Shown piece by piece: positions 4,579 through 49,025 of a DNA stretch of 64,000 nt. This DNA is from Schmidtea polychroa. Its lineage: Eukaryota. A program made the position numbers and the translations under genes. Numbering within the stretch: position 1 is the first letter of the stretch; the number at the start of each line of letters is the position of its first letter. Below the pieces are notes generated by a model. It made no database searches and was not told the origin of the DNA. It saw only the letters and a list, made by a program, of their open reading frames with translations. The stretch spans positions 26,412,001-26,476,000 of the forward strand of contig CM097885.1 in the NCBI GenBank assembly GCA_044892525.1, in the 5' to 3' direction.

Positions 4579-6009
4579 ATATTTCAGAAGAAACTTTTCA
4601 TCCATCACGGATATCGCAGCCAAATCATTATCACCTTCAGATGGATTCAAATATCGGCATCTCAATTTTATTATTAATAAATTTTCGAGGTTATTAATTA
4701 TAATTTTTTTCATAGTTACTATAGTAATAATTTTAATACGGATATGGGTAGTACTAATAAGGACCTGTATGATAAATATGGTGATAATAGCAACATTAAT
4801 ATGAAATTGGCGAGGATAATATAATAATTGCGATAACTTGAGAACCTGAATAACGATCATTGTAATAGTAATATAAAATTTCGTAATAATAAGGTAATCA
4901 TTGTAATAAGGACAAAGATATTAAAATTTAACGACTCGAACACTGAGAATAGTGATACTAATGTTATAAATATATAAATTTGTCATACTGATATAATAAT
5001 TGGAATGATGACAGGAATATTAATTTTAAGAAGTTAAGCAATAAAAATGGTGATAATGGTATTAGTAATATTAAAATTTCTCGTAATGATACAATAATTG
5101 TCAGAAGTATCAATACATTAGAACTCGAACAATAGTAATGGTAATAATCGCAACCCTAATAACAGTAATTATATAACGATAATGGGTGATTTCTCTGTCA
5201 TTTGGGTTGGCGGGTCGAAAGGTTTCATCCGTCCTTTGGCCTGAGGTCTTATCTTAGGTCTTGAAAAGTTAGTAATTTAACAAAGTCTTTAAATCCCCTT
5301 GAAAATTTTGAGTAGGGATCATCTCTATTATTTTAGTCTTTCATCGATTAGTTTTGTTGCGATAAAATTGTTTCAAATGAACAGACTACATTTCAATAAT
5401 TAGCTCAGTGATTCCTGTTACTGTGATGAATTTGAGTGAGATATAGGTCATTTGCTTACCTCCTTCAGCCGATCTGACCTCAGAAAATAAAAACTTAATG
5501 TTACAGGATGGACGAACACTAAAGATTCTGAAAATTAAATATTACATGATGGGAGCAGATAAATACAAAATAAACATACATATGGACAATAATCAATAAT
5601 ATCTATGAGATGAAAGAAATAAACATTACTATATTGACTTGTGATAATAACTTATTATTAACAATTTGATGTGATCTTTTAATTTATATATTTATGCAAT
5701 TATATTGATTTATTGGTTCTTGGTGACATTATAATAAAATAAACCCCATACGAATAAATTTATCTTGTTTGTTGATAAAAACACTTTTTCTTCATGGTAC
5801 TGGCGACGATGCCATCTGGGAGCTTCGGGTATGATGCGGACGAGCTGAAAACATGCCACAGAGAACTAAATGATATTGAAGAATTTCGAAACTTATGAAT
5901 GTCAAAATATCGTAGAATTGAACTGCTGGAGCCACAATGAGGATTCGTGAGAAGTAGTATGATTGGAGCTCCCCAGACCACATATACCCCCCTCCCCCCG
6001 GGGAAAAAA

Positions 6010-7680
6010 ATTTTTAGAACGATGCCACATATTTTTAGAACTATTATGTAATCGATGCCGCATATTTTTAGAACTATTACGTAATCGATGCCACATATTT
6101 TTAGAACGATGCCTATATTTTTCGAACGATGCCTCATATTTTTAGAACTACTACGTAATCGATGCCTAATATTTTTAGAACGATGACTCATATTTTTAGA
6201 ACTATTACGTAATCGACGCCTCATATTATTATTCAAAATATTATTAGTGATCTATCGGTGACATGGTTTTCGTTTGCCCAAAAGTTATCGTTCCCATTAT
6301 TTGAATTTATTGGACGATACCTCATCTTAAAGCCCTTTGCAAGATCTTTAAGATGAGTTATAGATTCCTATCATGCTATGATTCGTCATATTTTTAGAAC
6401 GATGACTCAATCGATGCCTCATATTTTTAGAAGGATGCCTAATATTTTTAGAACGATTATGTCATATTTAGAACGATGTCTCTTATTTTTAGAACGATTA
6501 CGTCATTATTTTAGAACGATGCCTCTTATTTTTAGAATGATTACGTCATTATTTTAGAACGATGCCTCTTATTTTTAGAATGATTACGTCATTATTTTAG
6601 AACGATGCCTCTTATTTTTAGAATGATTACGTCATATTTTTAGAACGATGACTCATCCTATGACTCATCATATTTTTAGAACTATTACATAATCGATGCC
6701 TCATTATTTTTAGAATGATGACTCATACGATGATTCATCAATGTCACTATAATTTTAGTAATAAAGACATCTATTTTTAGCAACATTTTAAATCTATTTT
6801 TAGTAACATTTTCGAACCAATGTTTTAATTATCGATTATGTAATAGTTTGATTTTGTTTAAATCATTGATTATATTATATTTTTTTTTTGTTTTAATTAT
6901 CGATTACTTAATAATTTAACTTATCATTATTATTGGGAAAGATATTAAAACACGCGCGAGAGTTATTATTATTATTATTATTTTTCTCCGAGTTTATCCG
7001 ACACGATATTCTGTCCCCCTAAGGGTAATGGTCACAAAGGTATTGCTAAAACTTTAACATATTATTACACACAATGTATCAAAAATATTATTAGTGTCCA
7101 CACATGCTACAAGTTAGTATTCCCATCGATAGCTCATCTTAAAGTCTAGTGTAAGATTATATAATTATCGAACGATGCCTCTTATTTTTAGAATGATGTC
7201 TAATATTTTTAGAACGATGCCTTATATTTTTAGAATGATGCCTCTTATTTTTAGAATGATTACGTCATATTTTTAGAACGACGCCTCTTAATTTTAGATT
7301 GATTACGTCATATTTTTAGAACGATGCCTAATATTTTTAGAACGATGCCTCATATTTTTAGAACGATGCCTCTTATTTTTAGAATGATTACATCATATTT
7401 TTAGAACGATGCCTCTTATTTTTAGAATGATGCCTCTTATTTTTAGAATGATTACGTCATATTTTTAGAATGATGCCTCTTATTTTTAGAACGATGCCTA
7501 ATATTTTTAGAACGATGCCTCTTATTTTTAGAATGATTGCGTCATTATTTTAGAACAATGACTCGCCCGATGACTCATCATATTTTTAGAACGATGCCTC
7601 ACCCGATGACTCATCATATTTTTAGAACGATGCCTCATTATTTTAGAACGATGACTCATCCGATGACTCATTAATTTTTA
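6010..7680 (+). repeat. Minisatellite arrays in the left arm (about 19-20 nt and 31 nt units based on tatttttagaacgatgcct), separated by spacer modules
   Basis: Arrays at about 6010-6235, 6385-6730 and 7170-7670, directly visible; the repetitive ORFs in the track here are artefacts of the repeats. Confidence 0.95.
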
Positions 7681-8160
7681 TGGAACAAAGACAATGACTC
7701 ATCAAGAAATTATTATTATTTTTCAAAATATTATTAGTGATCTAGCGGGCACATGGTTTTCGTTTGCCCAAAGGTTATCGTTCCCATCATCTGAATTTAT
7801 TAATCGTTATCTCATTTTAAAGCTCTGTGCAAGACCTTTCTAATGAGATATAGAAATATTTATAATCATTATTAAATTTAAAGATATTAACGCGAGCAGG
7901 GAATATTATTATCATATATCATATATAATCTATCCGACAAGATATTCTGTCCCACTATGGGTACTGCACACATGGGTACTGCTCACACTCAACAAGTCAC
8001 ATGGGTACTGTTCACAAAGTTACTACTAAAAATATTCAAGACAAAACTTTAACAAAGAAAGTCTAAATATTATACTTTAAATATACACTCAAACTAAAAT
8101 TTATTAACACATTCACATTCATCATCTCCACAGTTCATAACATTTTCAAATACAATTTCA

Positions 8161-8209
<49 letters not shown>

Positions 8210-8453
8210 GCAAATATTAGTCAAAAATATAAAATATTTTTACACACATACACAACCCATTAAACTTTATTATTATTATTATGATTATGATTATTATGAT
8301 TATTATTATATATAGACAGAGTCTGTCCGACAAGATATTCTGTCCCCCTATGGGTATTGCTCATAAGGGTGATGGTCACAAGGGTACTACTCACACTCAA
8401 CATATCGCAAGGGTTTTCGATCTTAAAGCATATTATGGTTTATTAGGGTTAGT

Positions 8454-9023
8454 AAATAAAACTTATCACACACACTTTAATATTTAAACGATAAAAAATC
8501 AAGACAAGAGAGGACAAGGCAAAGTGTATGCATTTAGTATTGCCAGGCCTAATGAGCAGTGACCAAATATCTGTGCCTGAAAGACACGGTGGATATTTGT
8601 TCGCGTCCACAAGGGTCGTCTGTGCCTCCCCCAAGTGGGGTCAGAAGAACCTGGGCATTATAGTTTTCCGTACGGAACATTACGCCTAGCATGGGTAGTC
8701 AACTACCAGCACATTCGAAACGTATAATTTCAAAATACATGCGTCATTGGCACTATAACCAAATTAATTAATGTTTTCACTAACACAAATATATATTTAC
8801 AGAGGCCTCCCACTAGTTAGATTACAACCGCCCACCACGACGATCAGCTTGTAAATATATATTAATTAAGGTATAAAGAGGACCCACCCAACCCTATTAT
8901 ATTTAATTTACAAATTTTTCTCGCTCTTCTGCTGGTAATCTATCTCAAAATTATCATCTCCATCGGGCCATTTGGAATACATCTTTCAAATTGGACGTAT
9001 TTCTTAGTTTCTGATGCGGTGCA
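8454..9023. other. Unique 570-bp central spacer (loop) of the foldback element
   Basis: Lies between ...ttattagggttagt (ends 8453) and its inverted copy actaaccttaataaacc (starts 9024); no other copy seen in the window. Confidence 0.85.
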
Positions 9024-9455
9024 ACTAACCTTAATAAACCATAATATGCTTTAAGATCGAAAACCCTTGCGATATGTTGAGTGTGAGTAGTACCCTTGTG
9101 ACCATTACCCATATGAGCAATACCCATAGGGGGACAGAATATCTTGTTGGATAGACTCTGACTATATATAATAATAATCATAATAATCATAATCATAATA
9201 ATAATAATAAAGTTTAATGGGTTGTGTATGTGTGTAAAAATATTTTATANNNNNNNNNNNNNNNNNNNNNNNNNNNNNNNNNNNNNNNNNNNNNNNNNNN
9301 NNNNNNNNNNNNNNNNNNNNNNNNNNNNNNNNNNNNNNNNNNNNNNNNNNNNNNNNNNNNNNNNNNNNNNNNNNNNNNNNNNNNNNNNNNNNNNNNNNNN
9401 NNNNNNNNNNNNNNNNNATATGTAAAAATATTTTATGTTTTTGACTAATATTTGC

Positions 9456-9494
<39 letters not shown>

Positions 9495-9562
9495 TGGTAA
9501 TGGGTTGTGTGTGTGTGTAAAAATATTTTATATTTTTGACTAATATTTGTAATAATAATATT

Positions 9563-9649
<87 letters not shown>

Positions 9650-9705
9650 GTTTAATGAGTTGTGTATATATGTAAAAATATTTTATGTTTTTGACTAATA
9701 TTTGC

Positions 9706-9747
<42 letters not shown>

Positions 9748-10389
9748 TGGTAATGGGTTGTGTGTGTGTGTAAAAATATTTTATATTNNNNNNNNNNNNN
9801 NNNNNNNNNNNNNNNNNNNNNNNNNNNNNNNNNNNNNNNNNNNNNNNNNNNNNNNNNNNNNNNNNNNNNNNNNNNNNNNNNNNNNNNNNNNNNNNNNNNN
9901 NNNNNNNNNNNNNNNNNNNNNNNNNNNAAATGTTATGAACTGTGGAGATGATGAATGTGAATGTGTTAATAAATTTTAGTTTGAGTGTATATTTAAAGTA
10001 TAATATTTAGAATTTCTTTGTTAAAGTTTTGTCTTGAATATTTTTAGTAGTAACGTTGTGAACAGTACCCATGTGACTTGTTGAGTGTGAGCAGTACCCA
10101 TGTGTGCAGTACCCATAGTGGGACAGAATATCTTGTCGGATAGATTATATATGATATATGATAATAATATTCCCTGCTCGCGTTAATATCTTTAAATTTA
10201 ATAATGATTATAAATATTTCTATATCTCATTAGAAAGGTCTTGCACAGAGCTTTAAAATGAGATAAAGATTAATAAATTCAGAACGATAACTTTTGGGCA
10301 AACGAAAACCATGTGCCCGCTAGATCACTAATAATATTTTGAAAAATAATAATAATTTCTTGATGTGTCATTGTCTTTGTTCCATAAAA

Positions 10390-13265
10390 ATTAATGTGTC
10401 ATCGGATGAGTCATCGTTCTTAAATAATGAGGCATCGTTCTAAAAATATGATGAGTCATCGGGTGAGGAATCGTTCTAAAAATATGATGAGTCATCGGGT
10501 GAGTCATTGTTCTAAAATAATGACGCAATCATTCTAAAATTAAGAGGCATCGTTCTAAAAATATTAGGCATCGTTCTAAAAATATGAGGCATCATTCTAA
10601 AAATATGACGTAATCATTCTAAAAATAAGAGGGATCGTTCTAAAAATATGAGGCATCGTTCTAAAAATATTAGGCATTGTTCTAAAAATATGACGTAATC
10701 AATCTAAAATTAAGAGGCATCGTTCTAAAAATATGAGGCATCGTTCTAAAAATATTAGGCATCGTTCTAAAAATATGACGTAATCAATCTAAAATTAAGA
10801 GGCATCGTTCTAAAAATATGACGTAATCATTCTAAAAATATAAGGCATCGTTCTAAAAATATTAGGCATCATTCTAAAAATAAGAGGCATCGTTCGATAA
10901 TTATATAATCTTACACTAGACTTTAAGATGAGCTATCGATGGGAATACTAACTTGTAGCATGTGTGGACACTAATAATATTTTTGATACATTGTGTGTAA
11001 TAATATGTTAAAGTTTTAGCAGTACCTTTGTGACCATTACCCTTAAGGGGACAGAATATCGTGTCGGATAAACTCGGAGAAAAAAAAATAATGATAATAA
11101 TAACTCTCGCGCGTGTTTTAATATCTTTCCCAATAATAATGATAAGTTAAATTATTACGTAATCGATAATTAAAACAAAAAAAAATATAATATAATCAAT
11201 GATTTAAACAAAATCAAATAATTACATAATCGATAATTAAAACATTGGTTCGAAAATGTTACTAAAAATAGATTTAAAATGTTGCTAAAAATAGATGTCT
11301 TTATTACTAAAATTATAGCGACATTGATGAATCATCGTATGAGTCATCGTTCTAAAAATAATGAGGCATCGATTATGTAATAGTTCTAAAAATATGATGA
11401 GTCATAGGATGAGTCATCGTTCTAAAAATATGACGTAATCATTCTAAAAATAAGAGGCATCGTTCTAAAAATATTAGGCATCGTTCTAAAAATAAGAGGC
11501 ATCATTCTAAAAATATGACGTAATCATTCTAAAAATAAGAGGCATCATTCTAAAAATAAGAGGCATCGTTCTAAAAATAAGAGGCATCGTTCTAAAAATA
11601 TTAGGCATCGTTCTAAAAATATGATGTAATCAATCTAAAATTAAGAGGCATCGTTCTAAAAATGTGAGGCATCGTTCTAAAAATAAGAGGCATCATTCTA
11701 AAAATATGACGTAATCATTCTAAAAATAAGAGGCATCATTCTAAAAATAAGAGGCATCGTTCTAAAAATAAGAGGCATCGTTCTAAAAATATTAGGCATC
11801 GTTCTAAAAATATGATGTAATCAATCTAAAATTAAGAGGCATCGTTCTAAAAATGTGAGGCATCGTTCTAAAAATATTAGGCATCGTTCTAAAAATATGA
11901 CGTAATCAATCTAAAATTAAGAGGCATCGTTCTAAAAATATGACGTAATCATTCTAAAAATAAGAGGCATCATTCTAAAAATATAAGGCATCGTTCTAAA
12001 AATATTAGGCATCATTCTAAAAATAAGAGGCATCGTTCGATAATTATATAATCTTACACTAGACTTTAAGATGAGCTATCAATGGGAATACTAACTTGTA
12101 GCATGTGTGGACACTAATAATATTTTTGATACATTGTGTGTAATAATATGTTAAAGTTTTAGCAATACCTTTGTGACCATTACCCTTAGGGGGACAGAAT
12201 ATCGTGTCGGATAAACTCGGAGAAAAAAAATAATAATAATAATAACTCTCGCGCGTGTTTTAATATCTTTCCCAATAATAATGATAAGTTAAATTATTAA
12301 GTAATCGATAATTAAAACAAAAAAAAATATAATATAATCAATGATTTAAACAAAATCAAACTATTACATAATCGATAATTAAAACATTGGTTCGAAAATG
12401 TTACTAAAAATAGATTTAAAATGTTGCTAAAAATAGATTTAAAATGTTGCTAAAAATAGATGTTTTTATTAATAAAATTATAGTGACATTGATGAATCAT
12501 CGTATGAGTCATCGTTCTAAAAATAATGAGGCATCGATTATGTAATAGTTCTAAAAATATGATGAGTCATAGGATGAGTCATCGTCCTAAAAATATGACG
12601 TAATCATTCTAAAAATAAGAGGCATCGTTCTAAAAATATTAGGCATCGTTCTAAAATAATGACGTAATCATTCTAAAAATAAGAGGCATCGTTCTAAAAT
12701 AATGACGTAATCGTTCTAAAAATAAGAGGCATCGTTCTAGAATAATGACGTAATCGTTCTAAAAATAAGAGACATCGTTCTAAAATATGACATAATAGTT
12801 CTTAAAATATGATGTAATCGTTCTAAAAATATTAGGCATCGTTCTAAAAATATTAGGCATCCTTCTAAAAATATGAGGCATCGATTGAGTCATCGTTCTA
12901 AAAATATGACGAGTCATAGCATGATAGGAATCTATAACTCATCTTAAAGGTCTTGCAAAGGGCTTTTAGATGAGGTATCGTCCAATAAATTCGGATAATG
13001 GGAACGATAACTTTTGGGCAAACGAAAACCATGTCACCGATAGATCACTAATAATATTTTGAATAATAATATGAGGCGCCGATTACGTAATAGTTCTAAA
13101 AATATGATGCGTCGTTCTAAAAATGTTAGGCATCGATTACATAATAGTTCTAAAAATATTAGGCGTCGTTCTAAAAATATGTGGCATCGATTACGTAATA
13201 GTTCTAAAAATATGTGATATCGATTACGTAATAGTTCTAAAAATATGTGGCATCGTTCTAAAAAA
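10390..13265 (-). repeat. Minisatellite arrays in the right arm (reverse complement of left arrays), with an extra spacer-plus-array block
   Basis: aggcatcgttctaaaaata units; spacer module at 10895-11340 is repeated at 12040-12500, whereas the left arm has one copy (6740-7170). Confidence 0.9.
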
Positions 13266-14371
13266 TTTTTTATCCCGGGGGGGGGGGGGGGTGGGGGTAT
13301 ATGTGGTCTGGGGAGCTCCAATCATACTACTGTGAGATCTAGATTGATGCAAGGATTGAATATTAAATGAAAATGAGTGAAGATAATGAGAGTCATCATA
13401 CCCGGAACCCAAATGACATGGTCACCAGGTGAATTTTCATTTATATATTTACTTATTTATGCATTTATTTCGTGCTGATTTTCATTGAATTGAAGTGAAT
13501 TGGGTTGATTTGTCCCTCATGACGGTGCAAGAGTGGTGGGCAGCAATGCTTGTGACTTTTGGGTGTGTCATGAGGGGTGGAGAAACTCTGGGATGAATGT
13601 TAGAAATTGAGCATGAAAATGACTTCATCGAGTGCGATCGATGACATTTTTCTTTATAAATTCCATCGTCAGAACATGAATTTCCAACAGCTTTGAAGTT
13701 AACAGCGAATTGAATAGATTCCACGAGAAACATGATTTGCACTGTAATTGATAGAACATCAAGTCTTGGCATTTTGACAACCAGTTTAGATTTGAATGAT
13801 TCGTTTCTTGTGAAGCATGACTGCTAGAGGATTTGGCCGGAGATATTGTTAACAATTGTAAATTCACGAGTAGTTCCAATACCTTTCATAGCAAACTTCA
13901 TATTTCTGAGACATTTTTGAGGAAAACTAGCATCGCGAGTGTATTAGCGACTAAATCTGGTATTCGTCGATCTAAACGTCCAAGGCAGGATCCGTAATCG
14001 ATTTTCTTGACAGACAAATGTCAGATAAGGAATCACGTCTAAACTAAATCTCGATATCTTAGATAACGAACATAAACAATTACCGGAATCATGATAGACT
14101 TCACGAGATATTTGTCCTTAGATTAGACTTGTCCGGGAACATTGCTGCAATTTGCTGATAAGACACTGCCGAAAGACATCCAGCACACAGATGCACTAAG
14201 CGTCTACCATTGAATAAATAAGACGGCTGATATCTTCTGGATGATAAACACTGTCTAAAAAATCGCAGACATTAGTATAAACCGTCAATAGATAAAGCGA
14301 TAAATAACGTCGACAATTATGGAAATCGCTCGTTCAGCAAATCCAATCGACAAAATTCTCATCTGTCAATA

Positions 14372-31951: not shown

Positions 31952-32169
31952 AGTAGTGGATGTATGGCCTTCACGGACCCAACCCACCCTCGGACGCCCG
32001 TCTCAAAACTTAATAAATTTTAAACATTTCCATCCTTTTAACCCTTTATTTTTACATCTTTTATTCATAAAAACCCCTAATTTACCAACCCAAATCTGTA
32101 ATCCCCCCATCCTTTTGACAGGGAACCGCGGAAAAAGGTTATGTCCGTGAAGGCCATACATCCACTACT
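31952..32169. mobile_element. 218-bp unit bounded by 27-bp perfect inverted repeats with Polinton-type AGTAGT ends
   Basis: AGTAGTGGATGTATGGCCTTCACGGAC (31952-31978) and GTCCGTGAAGGCCATACATCCACTACT (32143-32169); flanks gaatct and ataaaa are not a TSD. Confidence 0.9.
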
Positions 32170-32252
32170 ATAAAAAAACTGTAAAAATTTTAAATCTTAA
32201 AAACTTGCAAGCGGCGCAATTTGCATACCCAATAAAAAAATTTTTTAAAAAA

Positions 32253-35200
32253 ATGAATATTGAAATTTTGAATATGTATAATTGTAACATGTGTAATAAA
32301 AAATTTAAAAATAGAACAGCATTAATATCACACGAAAAATCTAAAGAGCATTTATTAAAGACGGTTGGACTAAATGATTCAAATTCAAAACTTTGTCCTA
32401 AATGTAAACAAAGATATTTACTTTTAGGATATGATAAACATTTTAAAAACTGTAGTGGGATTAAAAGAAATAGAAAAAAATTTGAATGCCCTATATGTAG
32501 ATCAAAATTCACCACAGAATCTTATTATTTAAAACATTTAAAAGAATGTGCTATTGTTAAAAGAGATCATGAAGAATCTGAAGAAGATATAAAAGTTAGA
32601 AAAGAAGAAGAATATGAAGAAGAAGAGATTGAAAAAGAAAAATATAATTGGGACAACTTTAACCATGTAGATAAATTTGAACAAACATTTATATTCTCTT
32701 CATCTTTAGAGTATATAAATAAAAATAAAAAAAACATAAAAAAATCAATGGAAGATGCTATAAAAAAATTTGGTAAATCAAGATTTAATATTATTAAATA
32801 TAAAATTAGAATCCATTCAAGATATTGGAGAGGAGAAGATGTAAACACAACACCCTTGGATGCTATAATTGAAACATCTTATGATTATTTATTCTCAACC
32901 GATGGATTTAATAAAAAAATTAAAGAGATTATTCATAAAGTTGCAGATGAGCATAGAGTGGTTGAACAAGAATTAGGAGAGTCAAACCTAAAATTCCTTT
33001 CATTTCAATCACTTGAAATTGAATATTGGAGAGGGGCACCTCCAAATCCTAAATCATATATCCCTACACCCTTTACTTCTATTCATATTATAAATGTTCG
33101 AAATAAGGATAATAAATGTTTTCAATGGTCAATCCTTGCACACTTACATCCTCAAGAAAATCATAAAGAAAGACCTGCAAAATATAAGCAATATGAAAAT
33201 GAATTAATATATCCAAAAGGATTTAAACACCCGATGAAGATTGAATACATTCCAATTTTTGAAAAATTAAATAATATTAAACTTAACATTTATGAATACA
33301 TTTGCCAGGTGGGTGATAGGAAACATATTATTCCTATCCATGTTTCAGATAGAGAATTATCAGAACAAGATAGAAATAGAGAAATATATCTTTTAATATT
33401 ACAAGAACATAAAAGAGAACAAGTCTATAAGGAATATGATGATCAGGATGAGGAAGAACAATATTTAAATATTGAAGACGATCAAGAAGAAGACCTTGAA
33501 GAGGAAGATGAGGGGAAACAACATTATATTCTAATAAAAAACTTTCAAAGCTTTATGAGATCGAAAAATCACCACAGTGGTGGAACAACATGTAAACGGT
33601 GTTTATATTATTCAGCTTCAGACATTGCAGCATTTAAACATGAAAGATTATGTTGTAAGAACTTGCCAGCATTAATTAAAATGCCGAGCAAGGAACAATC
33701 TAACATGCATTTTAAAAACTTTTCAAACCTGTTACAATCTTTAGTTGTAATATATGGAGACTTTGAAGCCATAAATATAAAACAGGATTTAGACCAAGAA
33801 TATTTAAAAATAATAGAAAAAAATAATCTATTAGACTCTTGGAACCAAAGGACTGAAGGAATCTCCATGAAAACTTTTTAAAATTAAATAATAAATCATA
33901 CACCATAAAATTAACAAAACAGGTGGCCTCAGCCTATAAACTATTTTTTAAAAGTAATTACCCTGACCTTGTAGAATCAGAAGAATTTTCATTTAGAGGA
34001 TCTACAGAAGAAGAAACTCTAAATCATTTTACTAAAGACATAAATGATTTAGAACATAAACTTTTTAAAATATTAAAAACAAACTTCCCAATAAACTTTT
34101 CAGACAAACAATGGGAAGAATATGAAAATTGCACAACTTGCTGGATGTGCAAATAGAAATACTCAAACAAATATACTCTTTGAGAATCCTGAAGGTCTTC
34201 CTGAAACTATTGAAGAAGAAGAACAAAGATTATTTCATCAACAACAAACTCAAAACATAAAAGTCCCTGACCATGACCACTTTAAAAAAGAAAATAATTA
34301 TAGAGGAGCAGCCCAAAAAAAATGTAATATAAATTGTAAAAGACCTGCATTTGTACCAGTTATATTTCACAATCTTTTTGGTTATGAAATCCACCTATTT
34401 ATAAAACGTCTAGCTGTAAATGCCAAAAACTCTTTTAAAGTCATAGGACTGACAAAAGAAAAATATAAATGTGTTCAATATGGACGACTAAAGTTTATAG
34501 ATTCATTAAACTTTCTATCAATGTCCTTGGATGGAATAGCAAAATCCATGAAACCTGAAGACTTCACCCATACAAATGAAAAAGTATTAGTAAAAAATAA
34601 TATTCCCCAGGAGGAATATAAAACCTGTTTGGCTAAAGGAGTCTATCCTTATGATTACATCAACTCATTTGATTGTTATAATGAAACATCTTTACCCCCT
34701 CAAGACTTGTTTTTTTTCAATATTAAATCAAACGGATATAAGCGATCAAGAATATGCCCGAGGGAATAAAATGTGGGAACTTTTCAAATGTAAAAACATT
34801 GGGGATTATACTGACATGTATTTATCCCTTGATGTTTATATCCTTGCAGATTGTTTCGAGGGATTTTGCAAGGCATTTGAATTAAAGCCTTATAATTATA
34901 TAACATCTCCATCTTTAGCCTGGGATATTTTATTATATACAATGTGGACAACGGAGTCCTCTCGGACGATAGAAATATTAACTGAAATCGACATGTTTAA
35001 TGTACTTAAAGAAAATATTCGTGGAGGTGTTAGCTCCGTGATGGGAGATAGAAATATAACTGCAAACAACTTTATATCTCTATACAAGAAATTCTTTAGT
35101 GAAAATCCTGAAGCAGACTATATACAAATAAAAACATAAGAGGATTCAAAATTAATAAAGGAAGGATTATCAAATCCATCAGAGATTATGTATATAGATG

Positions 35201-36720
35201 CAACAGCTTTATATTCAGGAATAATGACTCAATACCTTACAATTGATAACTTCATTCAGGTAGATATCCCATTGGAGACTTCGTCTAAGGAAAAACTTAT
35301 GAATGAAATATTATCAACTGAAAAAGATTCAGAAGTGGGATATATAGTAGAATGTGATTTAGAATATCCTAATGATATAAAATATGTAACTAGATACTTT
35401 CCATTTGCGCCAGTGAAAAGAAAAGTAGATTCTAATTAATTAACACCCCAACAAGATAGACCTACAACTGTAAAACTTTTATGTGATCAAACTGATAAAA
35501 CTTGGTATCTTTGTCACTATCGACTGTTACAATTTTATCTTTCTCATGGAATGAAAATAAAAAATATACATTCTATAATAAAGTTTAGACAACTTCCATT
35601 CATGAAAACCTTTATAGAGGGAAATATTAAATCTAGGAATGAAGCAAAAAGAAATGGAAACGCTTTCCTCGATATGATTTATAAACTTTTAAATAATTCA
35701 GTCTTTGGAAAGACAATGGAAAATGTTGACAAATATACTCGAGTAGAATTATTAACAAATAGTTCAAAGGATTTTGCAAGGTATAATCGAATGCTTTCAA
35801 AACCTACATTTAAAAATGCAGAAGTATTCTCCGAGAACCTTGTAGCCGTTGAACTAAAAAATAGTGAAAAGACTTATAACAAACCAATCTTTATAGGTTT
35901 TACCATTTTAGAATTATCAAAACTTCAAATGTATGAAACCTATTATGATATTCTACTACCACATTTTAAAAATAGAATATCAATGCATGCAATGGATACC
36001 GACAGTATGTTTTTAAAAATATATACTAAAAACCTAAAAGAGGAAATATCTGAAAATGAAATCCTAAGGAATTTAATAAATTCATCTGGAGAATTATTCA
36101 CCTTTAAAGATGAAAAACCTAATACACCAATAATTGATGCTGTATTTATTAGATCTAAACAATATTCACTAGAAATGATTGAAGCCCCAAAGACTGAAAC
36201 CCATTCAATTAGGATCGGGGATATAGACTATACATTTGATATACCAGTATTAAAACTTGTAACATCTAAAGATAATAAAAATAAAGGTATACAGAAAGCA
36301 GTTTCTAGAACTATACCCCATCAAGACTATAAGGATATTCTAAATAAAAATCAACCAGATAAAATAGTTGAGGTTCATCAACTTAAATCTGAAAAGCATA
36401 ACATGTATTTAGAAGAATCAAATAAAATATCATTATCAAATTATGATGATAAGAGGTATATTTTATCAGATTTAAAAAAGACACTTCCAATTGGAAATGA
36501 TATGATTCCACATATAAAAAATTTAAAAGTCTTGAATGATTTATATCATACAAACATAACAGACCTTCAACTGTATCAAGTTCAAATACTCTACCCAGAA
36601 ACTCGAAATATTTTAGACTCTATAACCATAGACGTCAAGTATTTAAATACTAATCCATCAGAAGAAGAATTTGAATCTCATAGATTAGAGATTCAAAGAT
36701 TATCAGCCATCAATGACTGA
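32253..36720 (+). pseudogene. polB: Protein-primed family B DNA polymerase with N-terminal zinc fingers and endonuclease-VII-like domain; about 3 frameshifts and 2 nonsense codons
   Basis: Fragments NKDNKCFQWSILAHLHP, CWMC...DHDH...YRGAA..CN, FHNLFGYE, DVYILADCFE, IDATALYSGIM (motif A), KLLNNSVFGK (B), MDTDS (C), KGI, DDKRY; stops at 35137-35139 and 35437-35439 are in frame. Confidence 0.95.
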
Positions 36721-37151
36721 AAGTCTCTGAAAGTCATTCTGGAATCTTAAAAATGACTGAAAAATCAATACTTGAAAACTTGAAGTCTTTAACTGACGAC
36801 AAGATACTTTTAATTGATATTATTAAAGTTTTGCATAGATTAAAAAATAAACCATCTGTTTCAATAATAAAAATTTTTTCTTTTATATTTATAACATCTT
36901 TTTTATTTGCTCTTTTATTTTCTCTTGCTCAACCTTGGTTGAAGTCTTTTTGGCTTTAATCTCTTTAGATATTTTCATCAACTGAACCTCAAGATCATTT
37001 ATAATCCAAAGTAATACAGGCTCTCGAATAGCAAGTTGCGCAGCTTGCAGGGCTTTATCCTCTGAAGATTTCTCATTATATTCTTTTAATGCAAGACTTG
37101 ATTCCTTTTTAATAATAGGATTGCTTTTTATCAAGTTTAAAACACGTTCAT

Positions 37152-37625
37152 TCATTTATTAAAGTTTTTATTTTCTTCTCTCCATTTGCTAAATAACAAG
37201 GTCTGGGGTCCGGAAGTCAAAGGCTGTTGATCTAAAATATCTTCAACATCTTCAGTCGTAGAGTCTTCTATCCTGGAGGCTAAAGGATCTTTCTTTTGCC
37301 TTTTATATTTCTTAGACTTGATGCAGTTATGATTTTGTTGAAGTACATTAGTTGAACAATCATTACAATAAACACCCTTTTTCTCTATAGCCTTCTTTCT
37401 CTTACCTGTATGCCTATAGGGAGAATCAATTCCTAAATCTTTTCTAATTCTTCTCATCGTCGAGTCTGAAGTACCAATCATTTTACAAATTTGAGTCTGA
37501 GAAAAAGTAGGGTTTTCACTCTTTATTCTAGCAAATTCAAAAGCCTTCTCTTTTTGTTGAATCTTATTTAAAATTAAAGGATCAATTAATGAAAGTCGTT
37601 CAACCTTTTTTATAAAGACATCCAT
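37152..37625 (-). CDS. Polinton small protein with HTH-like segment and Cys motif
   Basis: FSQTQICKMIGTSDSTMRRIRKDLGIDSPY resembles a helix-turn-helix; part of a tightly packed run of minus-strand ORFs with 36889-37155 and 37628-37846. Confidence 0.6.
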   Translation of the reverse strand: MDVFIKKVERLSLIDPLILNKIQQKEKAFEFARIKSENPTFSQTQICKMIGTSDSTMRRIRKDLGIDSPYRHTGKRKKAIEKKGVYCNDCSTNVLQQNHNCIKSKKYKRQKKDPLASRIEDSTTEDVEDILDQQPLTSGPQTLLFSKWREENKNFNK

Positions 37626-37880
37626 TTTTATATGTTTAATAGTTGAGGGAACAAAGCAAAATAGTATTCACCTCTCATTATTTGTTCTTGTATACTTAAA
37701 GATTTAAAGTTATTTATTTTATTTAAATAATCAGGGTCATTAATTCCTACAAGGTAAAATATATAACACTTTTCACCTATTCTAATTTTATCCTCTAATG
37801 ATAAACTTCTAAAATCATTCAACCTAGATTTCATTATTTCTTCCATTTTTAAATTAAAAATTATATAGTCTTACGAAGTC

Positions 37881-38260
37881 TTACGTCGACGTCTTTAAAC
37901 ATTTCTCTCGTTGTATTTTTTTAGAATATTCATTCTTGGCACTTGAAGTTTTCAACTTTATAACTTCATTTTTAATATCCCTTATTATTTGATTTGATTT
38001 CATTATTTCATCATCTGTTAGGATTCCATCTTCCAAAGCTTTCAATTGAAATAAAAATAATTTTGATATCCCCAAGTCTATTGTCAAACAAACTTCACGA
38101 TATAAACTTTTCTTTTTTGAAGTATAAGATAAAGAAAGTATTTCAGTCAAGAAAGAATCTGCAACAGAAATACTTCCAAGTATTACGGGTGCAAGAGTAA
38201 CAACTGGTAAAGTTATGGGTAAAACAATTGTAAGTATTGCAGATGTAAATCCTAAGGAGT
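37881..38260 (-). pseudogene. Polinton accessory protein with hydrophobic segment and C-terminal helical region
   Basis: Frame extends upstream of the ORF call as ...SAILTIVLPITLPVVTLAPVILGSISVA...LEDGILTDDEIMKSNQII. Confidence 0.5.
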
Positions 38261-38478
38261 AACCTATAATCTTTAAAGCTGTATTCCCTTTATTCCATCT
38301 TTTTTAATTTTTTTATAATGCTTCAACAAGTCTTGTAAATGTAAAGTTTCTGATTTAAATTCTTTCACTCTCATGACTTCAAGTTCTGTAGGAGCTGATG
38401 GAATCTTTGGATATTGTACTTCTGGACTTCGTACTACTGGACTTTGTACTTCTGGACTTCGTACTTCCATTTTAATAA

Positions 38479-39498
38479 TTAAAAAAATAAGACTTTATTA
38501 TCTGGTACCAACACTCGCATATCATAAGAAACTCTTTTTGAGAGAATGTCTTTATACAATTCTATCAACGCTTTACGAACTTCATCAACATCAACCTTTT
38601 TTTCATAAAATATTAAATCTATATAACTTACAAGTGTGCTTTTAAAAATAATATTCTTACTTTTAACTTTATGTATTTTATGTGAATCAGTTTTATCATG
38701 CCAATGTCCATGTGGTAAATCATAACCAGTTATTATAACTTCATCCTTTTCAAACTTAATACTATAATCACATTTTACAAACCATTTTATTGTTTCATCA
38801 TCATCATTAAATAAAAAGAAATAAGGATCAATAATGTTTACAACCATAAAACAAGACCATTCTTTACTACTTGTTGTTATTAAACTTGGTTCTATAAAAT
38901 GTTTATATCTATTGGGTAATAATGTATTATTCTGTTCTAATTCAGCAGCTCTTTTTCTAATAGTGTGTGTTGTGTTAATGTGTGTTGTATGAGACTCTAA
39001 TTTAACAAGTCTTACATTAAATGATGCAATCATCTCATTTATTATATTATATATTGTATTAAATGTAGTATTCATAATTTGTTTATCTTTAGAATTTAAT
39101 ATGGTAGTATTTAACTTTACAACTTGTTCAGTTAACAAACTTTGTAACTTGTCAAATTTATCATTAAATCGTTGTTCGATATTATTAAGCTTGGATTCTA
39201 TCAAGGCATTAATCTCGGTTCCCATTGAATCAATTTTTGTCGTTAATGAATTTTCAATTTTTGTTGTTTTTAAATCAGTATAATTTTTAACACCCACCTT
39301 TGCTTCATCTACATATTTTTTATTAGTTGCATCAAAATCATTAATTGGAGGACCTAAATCTTTTATCTTGTGAGCATTTAAATTTAAATCTCCCTTCATT
39401 GAATCTCCTACTTCATTAACAAATCTTTTTTCTGTAAGGTTTATAACATCTTCATCTTTTAATCCATCATTATATAATCCTAATTTATTATAATTCAC
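38479..39498 (-). CDS. Polinton fibre-like/coiled-coil virion protein, 339 aa
   Basis: GDSMKGDLNLNAHKIKDLGPPINDFDATNKKYVD resembles the tail-fibre-like repeat common in Polinton ORFs next to the penton; followed by a long coiled coil. Confidence 0.65.
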   Translation of the reverse strand: MNYNKLGLYNDGLKDEDVINLTEKRFVNEVGDSMKGDLNLNAHKIKDLGPPINDFDATNKKYVDEAKVGVKNYTDLKTTKIENSLTTKIDSMGTEINALIESKLNNIEQRFNDKFDKLQSLLTEQVVKLNTTILNSKDKQIMNTTFNTIYNIINEMIASFNVRLVKLESHTTHINTTHTIRKRAAELEQNNTLLPNRYKHFIEPSLITTSSKEWSCFMVVNIIDPYFFLFNDDDETIKWFVKCDYSIKFEKDEVIITGYDLPHGHWHDKTDSHKIHKVKSKNIIFKSTLVSYIDLIFYEKKVDVDEVRKALIELYKDILSKRVSYDMRVLVPDNKVLFF

Positions 39499-39507
39499 TT
39501 TTATAGT

Positions 39508-40284
39508 CTAAACTTGTTTCAAATGTAAACACATTGAAATCTTTTCTCCATTAAAATTAATTAATTCTCCATTTTCATCAACAATTCTAAAATGAATATC
39601 CATTAGGTTTTTTCTACATAAAGGTAAATAATTTGGAGGATTCATTCTTTCAACCATTTTATATCCAACTCGAACAACATTGGAAGGAAAGGAATATAAA
39701 ATATTTGCATGTTTACTATTATTGTATGATCCCATTATACAATCACACTCTATATTTATAGAATTTGTATTTGTTATTTGTATAATATATTTAGATTTAA
39801 AAGTTGATGATCGTGGATATTCTCCAACTTTAAAACCTAAAATAGTATGAAAGAAACTAGAATTAGTAACAACAAGTCCAACATCTTTTAAAGTTGCAAT
39901 ACATTTTGAAGTTTGAATATCTGCTTTTATTTCTACATTTCCATCTGTTTGTTTTAGAATTGCTTTAGCTAAATCTACTATTTCATATGCTCCAGGTTTG
40001 ATTATTTTAATGGCGAATTCTCGGGATTCAAACATAGATTGATATTAAGTTATTTTCTCATCAACCCTCCTAACTATAGTAAATTTATTATTATAAATAT
40101 TTATATTAAAAATAGTATTAAAACAGCTAAACCACAAGAGTCCTAATTCATAATTTAAATCTTGATCTAAATTTATTGAATCTTCAAAATTTATAGTAAA
40201 GTCTGATTCTTTTGAATTTATTAATAAACTTCTTGAATATTTATCTGACATTATGTTTACCATTTTTTTAAAATTATCTTCCAT
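39508..40284 (-). pseudogene. Minor capsid protein (penton), one in-frame TAA at 40045-40047
   Basis: The two ORFs are in frame; PGAYEI..L, NSINIECDCIMGSYNNS..NILYSF..GYKMVE..P.YLPL, IVDENGELINFNGE motifs. Confidence 0.85.
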
Positions 40285-40301
40285 TTTTATAATCTAATAT
40301 A

Positions 40302-41069
40302 CTAGTCATTTGTATATTTATTAAATTTATCTTTTGAAATTATTCCTTGTTTAAATAAATCTTTTGAAATCTTTAAAATATCAGAATTTAAATTATTATG
40401 TCCTGCTTTTTTAGCAGCTAATAGTTTTCTCAATTCTATAAAAAGACTGATGAAATCTATCCCCTCACCTTCTTTAACAATATAACCCCTTTCATTTTTA
40501 TTTAAATAATTCATTAAATCTTGAATATATTTTGCTTTTGGACTACCACCTATTATTTTTATTAACTTTAAATATTTTTCAATTTCTTTATTATTATCTG
40601 AAGCATATCCACAAATTAATCCATAAAAATCATCTGTAAATTCAAAGTCTAAATATTCATTATTATAAAGATTTTGTGAACGAAAATGTGGTTTATCTTC
40701 AAATATACCTAAAGTAAAGTTTTGTTTATTAATTGTTATTATTTGATATCCTTTAGCATTAATCTGAAATGTGGGCCTAATTGTTTCACTTAACCCCTCT
40801 CTAATTTTAGGATCAACTTTAAGAGGTTTTATAATCATTTCATCTTCATGCCACTCCAATTCATTAGTCCTTGGACTCTTATCTTCCACCTCTTTAGATT
40901 TTAGAGATTCTATAGCTTTAATTGTTGGTTGTTGTTGTTGTGTCATTTCTTCATTTGCTGTTATAGATTCACTATGTTGGGTTATATCTTTTATATTATA
41001 CTTGTCTTGTTCTGATTGTAATTTTTTTAAAAGTGCTAATCTTTCTTCATATACCATTTTTATGTACAA
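40302..41069 (-). CDS. Conserved Polinton hypothetical protein, 255 aa
   Basis: C-terminal ELRKLLAAKKAGHNN...DILKISKDLFKQGII resembles a motif typical of Polinton ORFs; located between penton and the pX-like ORF. Confidence 0.6.
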   Translation of the reverse strand: MYIKMVYEERLALLKKLQSEQDKYNIKDITQHSESITANEEMTQQQQPTIKAIESLKSKEVEDKSPRTNELEWHEDEMIIKPLKVDPKIREGLSETIRPTFQINAKGYQIITINKQNFTLGIFEDKPHFRSQNLYNNEYLDFEFTDDFYGLICGYASDNNKEIEKYLKLIKIIGGSPKAKYIQDLMNYLNKNERGYIVKEGEGIDFISLFIELRKLLAAKKAGHNNLNSDILKISKDLFKQGIISKDKFNKYTND

Positions 41070-41070
41070 T

Positions 41071-41565
41071 TTATTGTTCCTTAAATGGTTTTAAATACAA
41101 CCCTTTACCATTTTTAGTTTTACAGAGGCATCCATTCTTTAAAGATATACATATTTTTTTTAAATCATCTTTATCTTTTGAAGATAAAGATTCAGATGTA
41201 GAAATTTGATTTTTTAAAAAATCATTTAAACCTCTACCTTTATATGGATCGAGATATAACCCCTTACCCTTCTTTTTCATTGAATCGATTTCAGTTTGTA
41301 ATTTTTCTTTTTCCAAGTCTGTCTTTTGAGATTCTTTAGCTTTTTGAACTGTAGTTGCAATTCCTCCAGCTATTCCAGCTGCACCTGATAAACCTGCAAT
41401 GATTGCAGGTATCAAAGCCATTAGGGGAAGAATCCCTCCAGTCTTCAGTCTTTCTTTAACCTGTTCTTTTACATGTTTTCATATAAAATATTTTTTTCCA
41501 TCAATTACTACTGATTTATTTTTATTTGAATTTATTAATTCTTGTAAAGATTCTTCAGTTGTCAT
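41071..41565 (-). pseudogene. Small amphipathic virion-type protein of Polintons/adintoviruses (GGILPL...GKGLYL.P motifs); one in-frame TGA
   Basis: MTTEES...YFI*KHV...GGILPLMALIPAIIAGLSGAAGIAGGIATTVQKAK...GKGLYLDPYKGRGL...GKGLYLKPF. Confidence 0.7.
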
Positions 41566-41581
41566 TTTATAATAAATAAAA

Positions 41582-42350
41582 ATGGATACTTGGAAACCAA
41601 TTTTAACTCGGCACAAGAGTAAATTTAATAATAAATTAATTCCTGATAATTTTAGATTATTAATCGTTGGGTCTTCAGGTTGTGGAAAGAATGTACTTCT
41701 TTTGAGAATATTACTAGAAGAAGGGTTTTTAGATTATAATAATTTAATCTTTTTTTCTACAACCATAAATCAACCAGAGTTACAACTTTTGAAATGTGGA
41801 TTTGAAAATAAATTAACTAAAAAAGCTATAATTGATATTTTTAAAAATCAACATAGATGTCCTGATGAGGTTTTTCAACCTCGTGATATGATTGATTGGT
41901 ACAAGGAAAAAATTTTAGAATCAGATATTGATAATAAAAATGATTACATTTCTGAAAATGAATGGATTAAAGTTTTATTCTCTAATAAACCTGAAGATGT
42001 TTTACATTGTGATTTACTTCCTAAAGATGTAAAGAATCTAGTTATATTTGAAAAACCAAGAGATTCAAAAGAGTTACTTTACACGAGGTCGACATAATAA
42101 TTGTAATGTTATTTATATATCTCAAACTTATTATGCTTTAGATAAAAACTCTATAAGAAATAATTCTAATTGTTTTATATTTTTTAAATTAGAAAAGCGT
42201 GATAAGAATATGATTTATAGTGATTTATTTTCAAATGTTGAACCTGATAAGCAAATGTTTGATATGTTTGTAGATAATCATTGGAAAGAAAAATATAATT
42301 ATATTTATTTGGATAGAGAAGAAGGTGAAATATGGAAATGTTTATTTTAG
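41582..42350 (+). pseudogene. A32/FtsK-like genome packaging ATPase, frameshifted near 42055
   Basis: Walker A GSSGCGKN; NLVIF with Walker B apparently deleted; FTRGRHNNCNVIYISQTYY...IRNNSN in the second frame. Confidence 0.9.
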
Positions 42351-42361
42351 AGCTTGTCGAC

Positions 42362-43156
42362 TTAGAAATCTGTTTTCTGTAGTTCATTATTATAAAATCT
42401 ACCTAATATTTTTTCATTATTTAAATCAATGATGCTATATGTTATTGGAATTGTATAATGTATTTTATTTATAATAAAAATTTCATTTGTCCATTTTGCT
42501 GTGAATCCTTTTTCAAATTTATTTTTATATTTAAATATTCTTACTCGGTCACCAATTTTAAACTTTGGTTTTTCATTTACCACTTTAACGGTTTCAGGAT
42601 TTATAAGTTTTAAAGGATTCAAGTAAGCATTTAAAGGTGTTGATTTTATAGAACTATGTACATCATTATTATATTCATTTACAATCTTTTGTAACAATTC
42701 ATTGTTCCATTTTTGTTTTCCAATAGCAGTAAAATATTTCCACATTTTATTTTTTAATGTTCTATTTAATCTTTCAACTACGACTGCTTTTCCTTCGATT
42801 TCTGTTGAATATAATTTAATATCATTTTCATTTAAAAACTTTGTAAAAACTTTGTTATAAAATTCTGTTCCTTTATCACACCATAAATATTTTGGAATTC
42901 TTTGATGTTCTTCAAATATATTTTCAAATGCTTCTGTAATTGAATATCCTGTTTTGCTTTCTAAACATCTTGCAAAAGCAAATCTTGTATATAAATCTAT
43001 TACTGTTAAAATTATTTTATATTTTTCAGGGTCTGATGATTTGGTTGGCATAAAGACTAAATCAGCAGACCAAGTTTGATCTTTTTCATGTACTTGAACT
43101 TTTAAATATTTTTTATTTTTTCTAAATTCATGGTGTAATTCGTTGGCATATTTTAT
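42362..43156 (-). CDS. int: Retroviral-like (RVE) integrase; frame continues upstream of the listed ATG
   Basis: ANELHH...WSADLVFM...LTVIDLYTRFA, LWCDKGTEF, VVERLNRTLKNKMW (D,D,E triad); no C-terminal chromodomain. Confidence 0.93.
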   Translation of the reverse strand: MKYANELHHEFRKNKKYLKVQVHEKDQTWSADLVFMPTKSSDPEKYKIILTVIDLYTRFAFARCLESKTGYSITEAFENIFEEHQRIPKYLWCDKGTEFYNKVFTKFLNENDIKLYSTEIEGKAVVVERLNRTLKNKMWKYFTAIGKQKWNNELLQKIVNEYNNDVHSSIKSTPLNAYLNPLKLINPETVKVVNEKPKFKIGDRVRIFKYKNKFEKGFTAKWTNEIFIINKIHYTIPITYSIIDLNNEKILGRFYNNELQKTDF

Positions 43157-43741: not shown

Positions 43742-43757
43742 TTTTAAAAGTTAAAAA

Positions 43758-45029: not shown

Positions 45030-45140
45030 TTTTTATATTACTAAATTAGCAATTGCGCAGCTTGCTAGTTTTTAAGATTTAAAATTTTTAGAATTTTATA
45101 AATATAAAATTTTAAAAAATGACAAAAATCCGAACCCTAA

Positions 45141-49020: not shown

Positions 49021-49025
49021 GTATA

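What the first reader, a model, noticed from the sequence alone, without database searches (positions are those of the whole stretch)
5953..13331. Giant ORF-less palindromic element with Polinton-type ends and 6-bp TSD: candidate non-autonomous Polinton parasite
Seen: the termini AGTAGTATGATTGGAGCTCC and GGAGCTCCAATCATACTACT are perfect inverted repeats, flanked by an exact GTGAGA duplication. About 2.5 kb (left) and 4.3 kb (right) of inverted arms enclose a 570-bp core, with no coding capacity. Known: Polintons start with AG/AGT-repeat termini and make 6-bp TSDs through their RVE integrase, while hAT (8 bp), Tc1 (TA) and Gypsy (4-5 bp) do not fit. Inference: this is a foldback satellite element mobilised in trans by Polinton integrase and pPolB. 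Its ends differ beyond AGTAGT from the Polinton terminus at 31952, so its helper may be another family. Removing the element and one TSD restores an uninterrupted minus-strand frame of about 100 codons (...PGDHVIWVPG...LDL|TNPHCG...QQTR*), consistent with a clean insertion.
Basis: partly seen in the sequence, partly recalled or inferred. Interest (0 to 1): 0.9.

Follow-up and report, generated by a model that had tools for sequence, protein, structure and literature searches.

The report
Foldback element with Maverick-type ends
A 7.4-kb gene-less DNA palindrome in what is probably a flatworm genome has the end motif and 6-base insertion footprint typical of Polinton/Maverick virus-like elements, so it is probably a passenger that borrows their integration enzyme, but only this one copy could be examined.

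Summary
Window 5953-13331 is bounded by a perfect 39-nt terminal inverted repeat and an exact GTGAGA direct duplication (chance about 6e-4). Arms of 2501 and 4308 bases enclose a unique 570-base core. The arms hold 76 copies of a 21-bp subrepeat, all pointing away from the nearer end. No ORF has a family match.

The ends are (AGT)2//(ACT)2. That motif is reported as the commonest Maverick/Polinton end motif and goes with 6-bp duplications (PMC8097293). The other 6-bp families fit worse: IS3EU/GingerRoot ends are TA..TA.

My best reading is a non-autonomous foldback element inserted by a Polinton-type rve integrase supplied in trans (confidence 0.6). A role for the protein-primed polymerase is only inferred.

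- The "Polinton terminus at 31952" is a 218-bp unit with (AGT)2 at both ends, abutting the resident Polinton. Its status is unresolved.
- The restored 100-codon frame is weak evidence: 12.5% of background positions lie in such a frame.
- Both gaps lie in a tandem array of the right arm, so the outer right arm is joined at scaffold level only.

I left out scans that could fetch animal virus-like elements, so copy number and helper are unknown. Novelty: new variant of a known kind.

The parts
5947..5952 (.). Left copy of the 6-bp target-site duplication (GTGAGA)
   Evidence: It is identical to 13332-13337, and the neighbouring bases differ, so the length is exactly 6.
5953..5991 (+). Left terminal inverted repeat, perfect for 39 nt, beginning (AGT)2
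5953..8453 (+). Left arm (2501 nt). It holds 26 copies of the 21-bp subrepeat, all on the + strand, in three arrays (about 6020-6231, 6412-6656, 7170-7660) separated by less repetitive stretches.
8228..8453 (+). Inner inverted repeat, left copy (226 nt, 97% complementary to 9024-9249)
   Evidence: It lies in gap-free sequence.
8454..9023 (.). Unique 570-bp core (spacer) at the turning point. GC is 0.39, against 0.28-0.29 in the arms.
   Evidence: No ORF has a family match.
8750..8848 (-). Weak likeness to the 5' (Alu-domain) end of metazoan SRP RNA inside the core
   Evidence: Score 26.7 bits against a gathering score of 70, E 4.6e-5. Only about the first 45 model positions align well.
9024..9249 (-). 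Inner inverted repeat, right copy, cut by gap 1
9250..9927 (.). Two assembly gaps (9250-9417, 9788-9927) around 370 read bases (9418-9787). These bases are tandem copies of a 56-nt unit plus (TAA)n. The left arm has one such unit (8210-8265).
   Evidence: Five unit copies are visible, three of them cut by gap edges. The gap content is unknown and was not filled.
9024..13331 (-). Right arm (4308 positions, 308 of them N). It holds 50 copies of the 21-bp subrepeat, all on the - strand.
9928..11653 (-). Inner block of the right arm, mirror of left 6412-8145 (94% over 1742 nt)
11539..13331 (-). Outer block of the right arm, mirror of left 5953-7657 (89% over 1817 nt). Together with the inner block, this shows that a stretch of about 1.2 kb (left 6412-7650) is present twice in the right arm.
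13293..13331 (-). Right terminal inverted repeat, ending (ACT)2
13332..13337 (.). Right copy of the 6-bp target-site duplication (GTGAGA)
31952..32169 (.). Neighbour: a 218-bp unit with 33-nt terminal inverted repeats and (AGT)2 at both ends. It abuts the Polinton body and has no target duplication.
32170..45099 (.). Neighbour: resident Polinton/Maverick body. It has a DNA_pol_B_2 fragment, an rve integrase, a double-jelly-roll capsid gene, an A32-like ATPase fragment and a PLA2-like domain. A 50-nt inverted repeat sits at its two edges.

Best explanation
This is a non-autonomous mobile element of foldback architecture: long inverted arms built from arrays of a 21-bp subrepeat around a short unique core. 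Its ends are of the Maverick/Polinton type.

Shown:
- A perfect 39-nt terminal inverted repeat beginning (AGT)2.
- An exact 6-bp target duplication.
- No genes.
- 76 subrepeats oriented outward in both arms.
- A resident Polinton with an rve integrase in the same window.

Inferred:
- A Polinton-type (retroviral-like, rve) integrase made elsewhere in the genome recognised the two identical ends. It joined them to target cuts staggered by 6 bp, and repair of those cuts gave the GTGAGA duplication.
- The twice-repeated AGT at each end is the kind of end repetition that protein-primed polymerases use for jumping back. The element may therefore also be copied by a helper's pPolB, but this is a guess.
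- The oriented 21-bp arrays (about two helical turns per unit) are candidate binding sites for a helper protein. This is also a guess.

The unequal arms are explained by an extra tandem copy of about 1.2 kb, and by amplification of a 56-nt unit in the right arm. This is the unequal-exchange behaviour usual in foldback arms.
For: - Ends and duplication.
- The only other (AGT)2-ended inverted-repeat pair in the window sits at the edge of the Polinton.
- PMC8097293 reports that (AGT)2//(ACT)2 is the commonest end motif of vertebrate Mavericks and comes with perfect 6-bp duplications. It also reports that end-motif repetition is expected to serve jumping-back in protein-primed replication.
- PMC10045372 gives 6 bp as the characteristic duplication of Polintons, 4 bp for Ginger1 and 4-5 bp for Ginger2, and TA..TA ends for IS3EU/GingerRoot.
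- Polinton genes lie 18.8 kb away.
- Polintons are present and piRNA-controlled in the planarian Schmidtea mediterranea (PMC8532177). I suspect, but have not shown, that the window comes from that species or a close relative.
- Arm architecture.
- No coding capacity.
- The arms differ by 1-11% and by structural changes, and a 570-bp spacer sits at the turn. Inverted-duplicate sequencing artefacts do not look like this.
Against: - Only one copy was seen, so 6 bp and (AGT)2 are single observations.
- The element has no sequence similarity to the resident Polinton.
- Its ends match the Polinton-adjacent unit only in AGTAGT.
- The end motif is documented for vertebrate Mavericks, not flatworm ones.
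- Whether the 218-bp unit is truly the Polinton's terminus is unresolved.
- hAT6 families also make 6-bp duplications.
- The outer right arm is joined to the rest across two gaps.
- No helper with matching ends has been identified, because the searches that could find one were left out.
Confidence: 0.6

Rival explanations
1. Palindromised single-end fragment. One terminal piece of a Polinton-like linear genome folded back at a short internal inverted repeat and was copied into a giant palindrome. It thereby regained two identical functional ends, and the product was then integrated. This is a special origin story within the Polinton-end reading, not a different enzyme.
For: - Everything except a 570-bp spacer is inverted-repeated.
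- The turning point has the form 'short inverted repeat, non-palindromic spacer, short inverted repeat' (8228-9249). The same form is described for palindromes that arise from a free end near a short inverted repeat (Tetrahymena rDNA; Yasuda and Yao 1991 as cited in PMC5182062).
- The two ends are perfectly identical for 39 nt.
Against: - An ordinary internal-deletion derivative of an element with 2.5-kb terminal repeats gives the same picture.
- No parent sequence is known.
- The arms have since diverged and rearranged, so the original symmetry cannot be read.
Confidence: 0.12
2. A foldback-shaped non-autonomous member of another cut-and-paste superfamily that makes 6-bp duplications (hAT6, IS3EU/GingerRoot, Dada). 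The AGTAGT ends would then be a coincidence.
For: - hAT families with 6-bp duplications exist in animals.
- IS3EU/GingerRoot make 6-bp duplications.
- A hAT-like transposase ORF lies in the window at 47498-48853.
- Foldback shape has arisen in several superfamilies. For example Galileo, first taken for a Foldback element, is a P element (PMC3573991).
Against: - IS3EU/GingerRoot ends are TA..TA, occasionally TG..CA. That is not met here.
- The insertion site is not an snRNA or tRNA gene, which Dada elements target according to my memory.
- The exact (AGT)2 hexamer has a prior chance of about 1 in 4096 for an unrelated family, while it is the commonest Maverick end motif.
- hAT ends are usually of the YARNG type (from memory). 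That is not met here.
Confidence: 0.15
3. Assembly chimera. The palindrome, or the link between its two halves, was produced by scaffolding of repeats.
For: - Two gaps lie inside the right arm.
- The outer right arm (9928-13331) is connected only through them.
- The gap-edge copies of the 56-nt unit overlap in unit coordinates, which shows the assembler struggled here.
- The extra 1.2-kb block of the right arm lies in repeat arrays that are easy to mis-assemble.
Against: - The turning point with both inner repeats lies in one gap-free stretch, 5953-9249.
- The two outer ends carry the same 39-nt terminus in opposite orientation and the same 6-bp flank (chance 6.5e-4).
- The flank frames are compatible.
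- The arms are not identical, so this is not a read-level inverted duplicate.
Confidence: 0.08

Closest known systems
Maverick/Polinton elements (end structure)
   Same: 5'-(AGT)2//(ACT)2-3' end motif, terminal inverted repeats and a perfect 6-bp target duplication (PMC8097293; window).
   Different: It has no pPolB, integrase or capsid genes. It is 7.4 kb, against the roughly 13-kb body of the Polinton in this window and about 17 kb for intact vertebrate Mavericks. Almost the whole element is inverted repeat. It has no sequence similarity to the resident Polinton.
Drosophila Foldback (FB) elements
   Same: Long inverted arms made of short tandem subrepeats, unequal arm lengths, a short or absent central loop, and mostly no coding capacity (my own knowledge; window).
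   Different: FB makes 9-bp duplications (from memory), whereas this element makes 6 bp. The end sequences are unrelated.
Galileo/Kepler/Newton (foldback-like P-superfamily elements)
   Same: Long, internally repetitive terminal repeats. Many copies consist of two repeats only. Terminal-repeat length is dynamic (PMC3573991).
   Different: They make 7-bp duplications, and P-type transposase is present in complete copies.
IS3EU/GingerRoot and hAT6
   Same: 6-bp target duplications.
   Different: IS3EU/GingerRoot ends are TA..TA. hAT6 belongs to hAT, whose ends and short terminal repeats differ (from memory). Neither is known to me with (AGT)2 ends.
Tlr elements of Tetrahymena (Maverick relatives)
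   Same: Long inverted repeats at the ends of a Maverick-related element. A family with long inverted repeats is cited in PMC5182062. From memory, the Tlr1 repeat contains tandem 19-mers.
   Different: Tlr elements carry genes and are ciliate germline elements. I could not read the primary paper, so the tandem 19-mers rest on memory only.

Membership tests
Polinton/Maverick (as a non-autonomous derivative) | 6-bp target-site duplication | tested here: met
   GTGAGA on both sides, exactly 6 bp. The family value is from PMC10045372 and PMC8097293.
Polinton/Maverick (as a non-autonomous derivative) | Terminal inverted repeats with a repeated end motif, (AGT)2//(ACT)2 or (AG)3//(CT)3 | tested here: met
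   The ends are AGTAGT and ACTACT, and the inverted repeat is perfect for 39 nt. The motif is from PMC8097293, where it is documented for vertebrates.
Polinton/Maverick (as a non-autonomous derivative) | Encodes pPolB and an rve integrase (definition of an autonomous Polinton, PMC5499653) | tested here: not met
   No ORF has a family match, and there is no tblastx match to the resident Polinton. It is therefore not a Polinton proper. At most it is a dependent of one.
Polinton/Maverick (as a non-autonomous derivative) | Ends shared with an autonomous Polinton of the same genome | tested here: inconclusive
   In the window, only the AGTAGT hexamer is shared with the unit next to the Polinton. 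A genome-wide test was left out (see referred steps).
Drosophila Foldback family | Long terminal repeats built of tandem subrepeats | tested here: met
   76 oriented 21-bp units in higher-order arrays.
Drosophila Foldback family | 9-bp target duplication (value from memory) | tested here: not met
   6 bp here.
P superfamily foldback-like elements (Galileo) | 7-bp target duplication | tested here: not met
   6 bp here. The 7-bp value is from PMC3573991.
IS3EU/GingerRoot | 6-bp duplication with TA..TA (rarely TG..CA) termini | tested here: not met
   The duplication length fits, but the termini are AG..CT.
hAT6 | 6-bp duplication with a hAT transposase or hAT-type ends | tested here: inconclusive
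   The duplication length fits. No transposase is present. I know hAT-type ends only from memory, and they do not resemble AGTAGT. The ends of hAT6 families could not be looked up.
MITE | Small size (hundreds of bp) and high copy number | tested here: not met
   The element is 7379 bp. Copy number is not testable here. The 218-bp unit at 31952-32169 would fit the size criterion.

The most novel reading that the evidence does not exclude
The element is a defective, palindromised terminal fragment of an animal Maverick's linear replicative genome. One end folded back at a short inverted repeat and was copied, so that two working ends were regained. The product was then integrated by the helper's integrase. 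It would be the Maverick counterpart of the defective genomes with large inverted duplications known from other protein-primed DNA viruses (my recollection), and so indirect sequence evidence that Mavericks of animals pass through a free linear replicating form.
Probability: 0.12. Interest if true: 0.8.

Novelty: new variant of a known kind. Interest (0 to 1): 0.5.

Why it matters
Foldback architecture has been tied to the MULE-like Foldback family, and to P elements through Galileo. In the 8.4 million papers searched I found no description of a foldback-type, gene-less element with Maverick/Polinton ends, and none of foldback elements in planarians.

If a census confirms the family, three things follow:
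- Polinton-type integrases support dependent passengers of several kilobases.
- There would be a clean marker, 39-nt ends plus 6-bp duplications, for recent integrase activity in a genome where Polintons are known piRNA targets.
- The origin of the palindrome could bear on whether animal Mavericks replicate as free linear molecules.

If it remains a single copy, it is a curiosity.

Tried and rejected
- Similarity of the element to the rest of the window, including the Polinton, by blastn and tblastx: none.
- Similarity of the element's end to the (AGT)2 end at 31952 beyond the hexamer: not above chance (p 0.2-0.24).
- Other (AGT)2- or (AG)3-ended inverted-repeat pairs with 6-bp duplications in the window: none besides the element and the 218-bp unit.
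- Pfam on the two flank pieces, on neighbouring ORFs and on the core ORFs: nothing.
- Protein-level search with a 95-aa ORF of the terminal arm, as a way to see other copies: nothing.
- Exact look-up of the kinase ORF to name the genome: not on record.
- Host naming. The kinase's best hits are metazoan PKA catalytic subunits at 43-51% identity, several from flatworms. Together with the mir-753 hit, which from memory is a planarian family, this points to a planarian. The literature search for mir-753 gave no confirmation.
- The Polinton capsid protein's relatives are all unnamed metagenome proteins.
- Kapitonov and Jurka 2006 and Wells et al. 1994 could not be read.
- A target duplication for the 218-bp unit, for the Polinton body, or for the two together: none (4 of 6 at best).
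- Rejected on duplication length or ends: Tc1/mariner, standard 8-bp hAT, P/Galileo, Foldback/MULE, Ginger1/2, IS3EU.
Full report
**1. Observation**

They are the only two matches in 64 kb at up to three mismatches, against none in 100 shuffles. The terminal inverted repeat is perfect for 39 nt and then continues with small indels in a C run. GTGAGA lies directly outside both ends (5947-5952 and 13332-13337). The next bases differ, so the direct duplication is exactly 6 bp. At this composition (71% A+T) a 6/6 match has a chance of 6.5e-4. The element is 7379 positions long: left arm 2501, core 570, right arm 4308 of which 308 are N.

**2. Gaps, tested first**

- The gaps (9250-9417 and 9788-9927) lie in the inner right arm. 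They sit inside a tandem array of a 56-nt unit plus (TAA)n.
- The left arm has one copy of that unit (8210-8265). The read letters of the right arm show five copies, three of them cut by gap edges.
- The two copies cut by gap 1 overlap by 17 positions in unit coordinates. Gap 1 may therefore hide anything from no copy to several. I did not fill or bridge it.
- No reading frame is at stake. The ORFs that one search lists across N are artefacts.
- The mirror image of the left arm runs exactly up to the gap edges: 8228 pairs with 9249, and 8145 pairs with 9928. Order and orientation therefore fit the palindrome.
- The outer right arm is still tied to the rest only at scaffold level.
- The turning point itself (inner repeat 8228-8453, core, inner repeat 9024-9249; 97% complementary) lies in one gap-free stretch.

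**3. Anatomy**

- The arms carry 76 copies (3 mismatches or fewer) of a 21-bp subrepeat: 26 in the left arm, all on the + strand, and 50 in the right arm, all on the - strand. There are none elsewhere in the window.
- Spacings of 21, 33 and 43 bp, and higher-order periods of 64, 85, 149 and 191 bp, show arrays that have been reshuffled.
- The last eight positions of the unit are kept in 93-100% of copies, and two central positions in only 55-71%.
- Left 5953-7657 mirrors right 13331-11539 (89%). Left 6412-8145 mirrors right 11653-9928 (94%). The right arm therefore holds an extra tandem copy of about 1.2 kb. With the amplified 56-nt unit, this explains the unequal arms.
- Ungapped blocks are 96-99% complementary.
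- Nothing in the element resembles the rest of the window at the DNA or translated level.
- The ORFs inside it have no Pfam match, and an arm ORF has no protein relatives.

**4. Surroundings and host**

A Polinton/Maverick lies at about 32170-45099. Its matches are:
- the C-terminal part of DNA_pol_B_2;
- an rve integrase core;
- a double-jelly-roll capsid domain, whose relatives are up to 94% identical but all unnamed metagenome proteins;
- an A32-like ATPase;
- a PLA2-like domain.

It looks damaged. The polymerase match sits in the last of at least three successive ORFs on that strand, and I could not establish the number of breaks. The ATPase appears split once between two frames, on weak evidence. 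I give no positions.

The host is an animal:
- The intronless kinase at 18594-19655 is closest to metazoan PKA catalytic subunits at 43-51% identity, several from flatworms.
- There is a mir-753 hit at the gathering score.

From memory mir-753 is a planarian family. That, together with the A+T richness, suggests Schmidtea or a relative, but I could not confirm it.

**5. The 'Polinton terminus at 31952'**

This is the left end of a 218-bp unit (31952-32169). It has 33-nt terminal inverted repeats and (AGT)2 at both ends. Its right end abuts, to the base, the 50-nt inverted repeat that the Polinton body shares with its far end (32171-32221 and 45051-45099). The far end has no such unit, and no further copy exists in the window. 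Neither the unit, nor the body, nor the two together have a target duplication. I cannot say which of these it is:
- the Polinton's true terminus, with the right one lost;
- a small passenger of the same end type.

Either way, (AGT)2 ends occur next to a Polinton in this genome.

**6. What it is**

[quoted passage not shown] It also reports that such end repetition is expected to serve jumping-back in protein-primed replication.
- PMC10045372 gives 6 bp as characteristic of Polintons, 4 bp for Ginger1, 4-5 bp for Ginger2 and 3-6 bp for LTR elements. It gives TA..TA ends for the other 6-bp family, IS3EU/GingerRoot.
- hAT6 families also make 6 bp.
- Galileo shows that foldback shape says nothing about superfamily.

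The hexamer at the ends is the discriminating feature. It has odds of about 1 in 4096 for an unrelated family, yet it is the commonest Maverick motif. I therefore take the element for a gene-less foldback passenger whose ends are handled by a Polinton-type integrase supplied in trans (confidence 0.6). Use of a helper's pPolB, and protein binding to the 21-bp arrays, are inferences only.

**7. Rivals**

- An origin by fold-back copying of one terminal fragment. The turning point has the form 'short repeat, spacer, short repeat' that is described for palindromes formed at free ends.
- Another 6-bp superfamily.
- An assembly chimera. This is unlikely because both ends share terminus and flank, the arms are not identical, and the turn lies in gap-free sequence.

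**8. The restored frame**

Read apart, the two flank frames are compatible across the empty site. However, neither piece has a family match, and 12.5% of background positions in this window lie in an open stretch of 99 codons or more. The frame adds little beyond the duplication.

**10. Slips**

- The 21-mer typed as the pattern was taken from the consensus line that the tandem-repeat tool printed. It is letter for letter the natural copy at 6127-6147. From then on I used that copy by reference. The counts are the same (76).
- In my private reasoning I set a remembered stretch of SRP RNA beside the core.

**11. Verdict**

The element is a new variant of known kinds: foldback elements and Polinton-end elements. 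It is of moderate interest until a census shows that it is a family.

Noticed in passing
window 31952-32169: A 218-bp unit with 33-nt terminal inverted repeats and (AGT)2 at both ends. It abuts the Polinton body's own 50-nt inverted repeat exactly, has no target duplication and has no counterpart at the Polinton's right end. It could be the Polinton's terminus or a miniature passenger.
   Followed up: partly
window 8750-8848 (-): The core of the foldback has a sub-threshold match to metazoan SRP RNA (26.7 bits, gathering score 70, E 4.6e-5). Only about the first 45 positions (the 5' Alu domain) align well. It may be a captured or SINE-like fragment.
   Followed up: partly
window 60622-60682 (-): A mir-753 microRNA precursor hit, full length, just at the gathering score (62.1 against 62). 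From memory this is a planarian family, and I used it as a hint to the host.
   Followed up: partly
window 18594-19655 (+): An intronless 353-aa protein kinase ORF, 43-51% identical to metazoan PKA catalytic subunits. It may be a divergent retrocopy or paralogue.
   Followed up: partly
window 32170-45099: A resident Polinton/Maverick that looks damaged. The polymerase match is confined to the last of at least three successive ORFs, with the number of breaks not established. The ATPase is probably split once by a frame change. A 558-aa ORF with C2H2 zinc fingers sits at its left end.
   Followed up: partly
window 47498-48853 (-): A 451-aa ORF with zf-BED and DUF4371, a hAT-like transposase remnant. 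Its ends were not determined.
   Followed up: no
window 45425-46167 and 49024-49914: Two further small inverted-repeat elements right of the Polinton. The second has ends that look like a TA-flanked Tc1/mariner-type MITE.
   Followed up: no
window 9212-9249 and 9421-9455: The unit copies cut by gap 1 overlap by 17 positions in unit coordinates, so the estimated 168-N gap could be much shorter or could hide further copies.
   Followed up: partly
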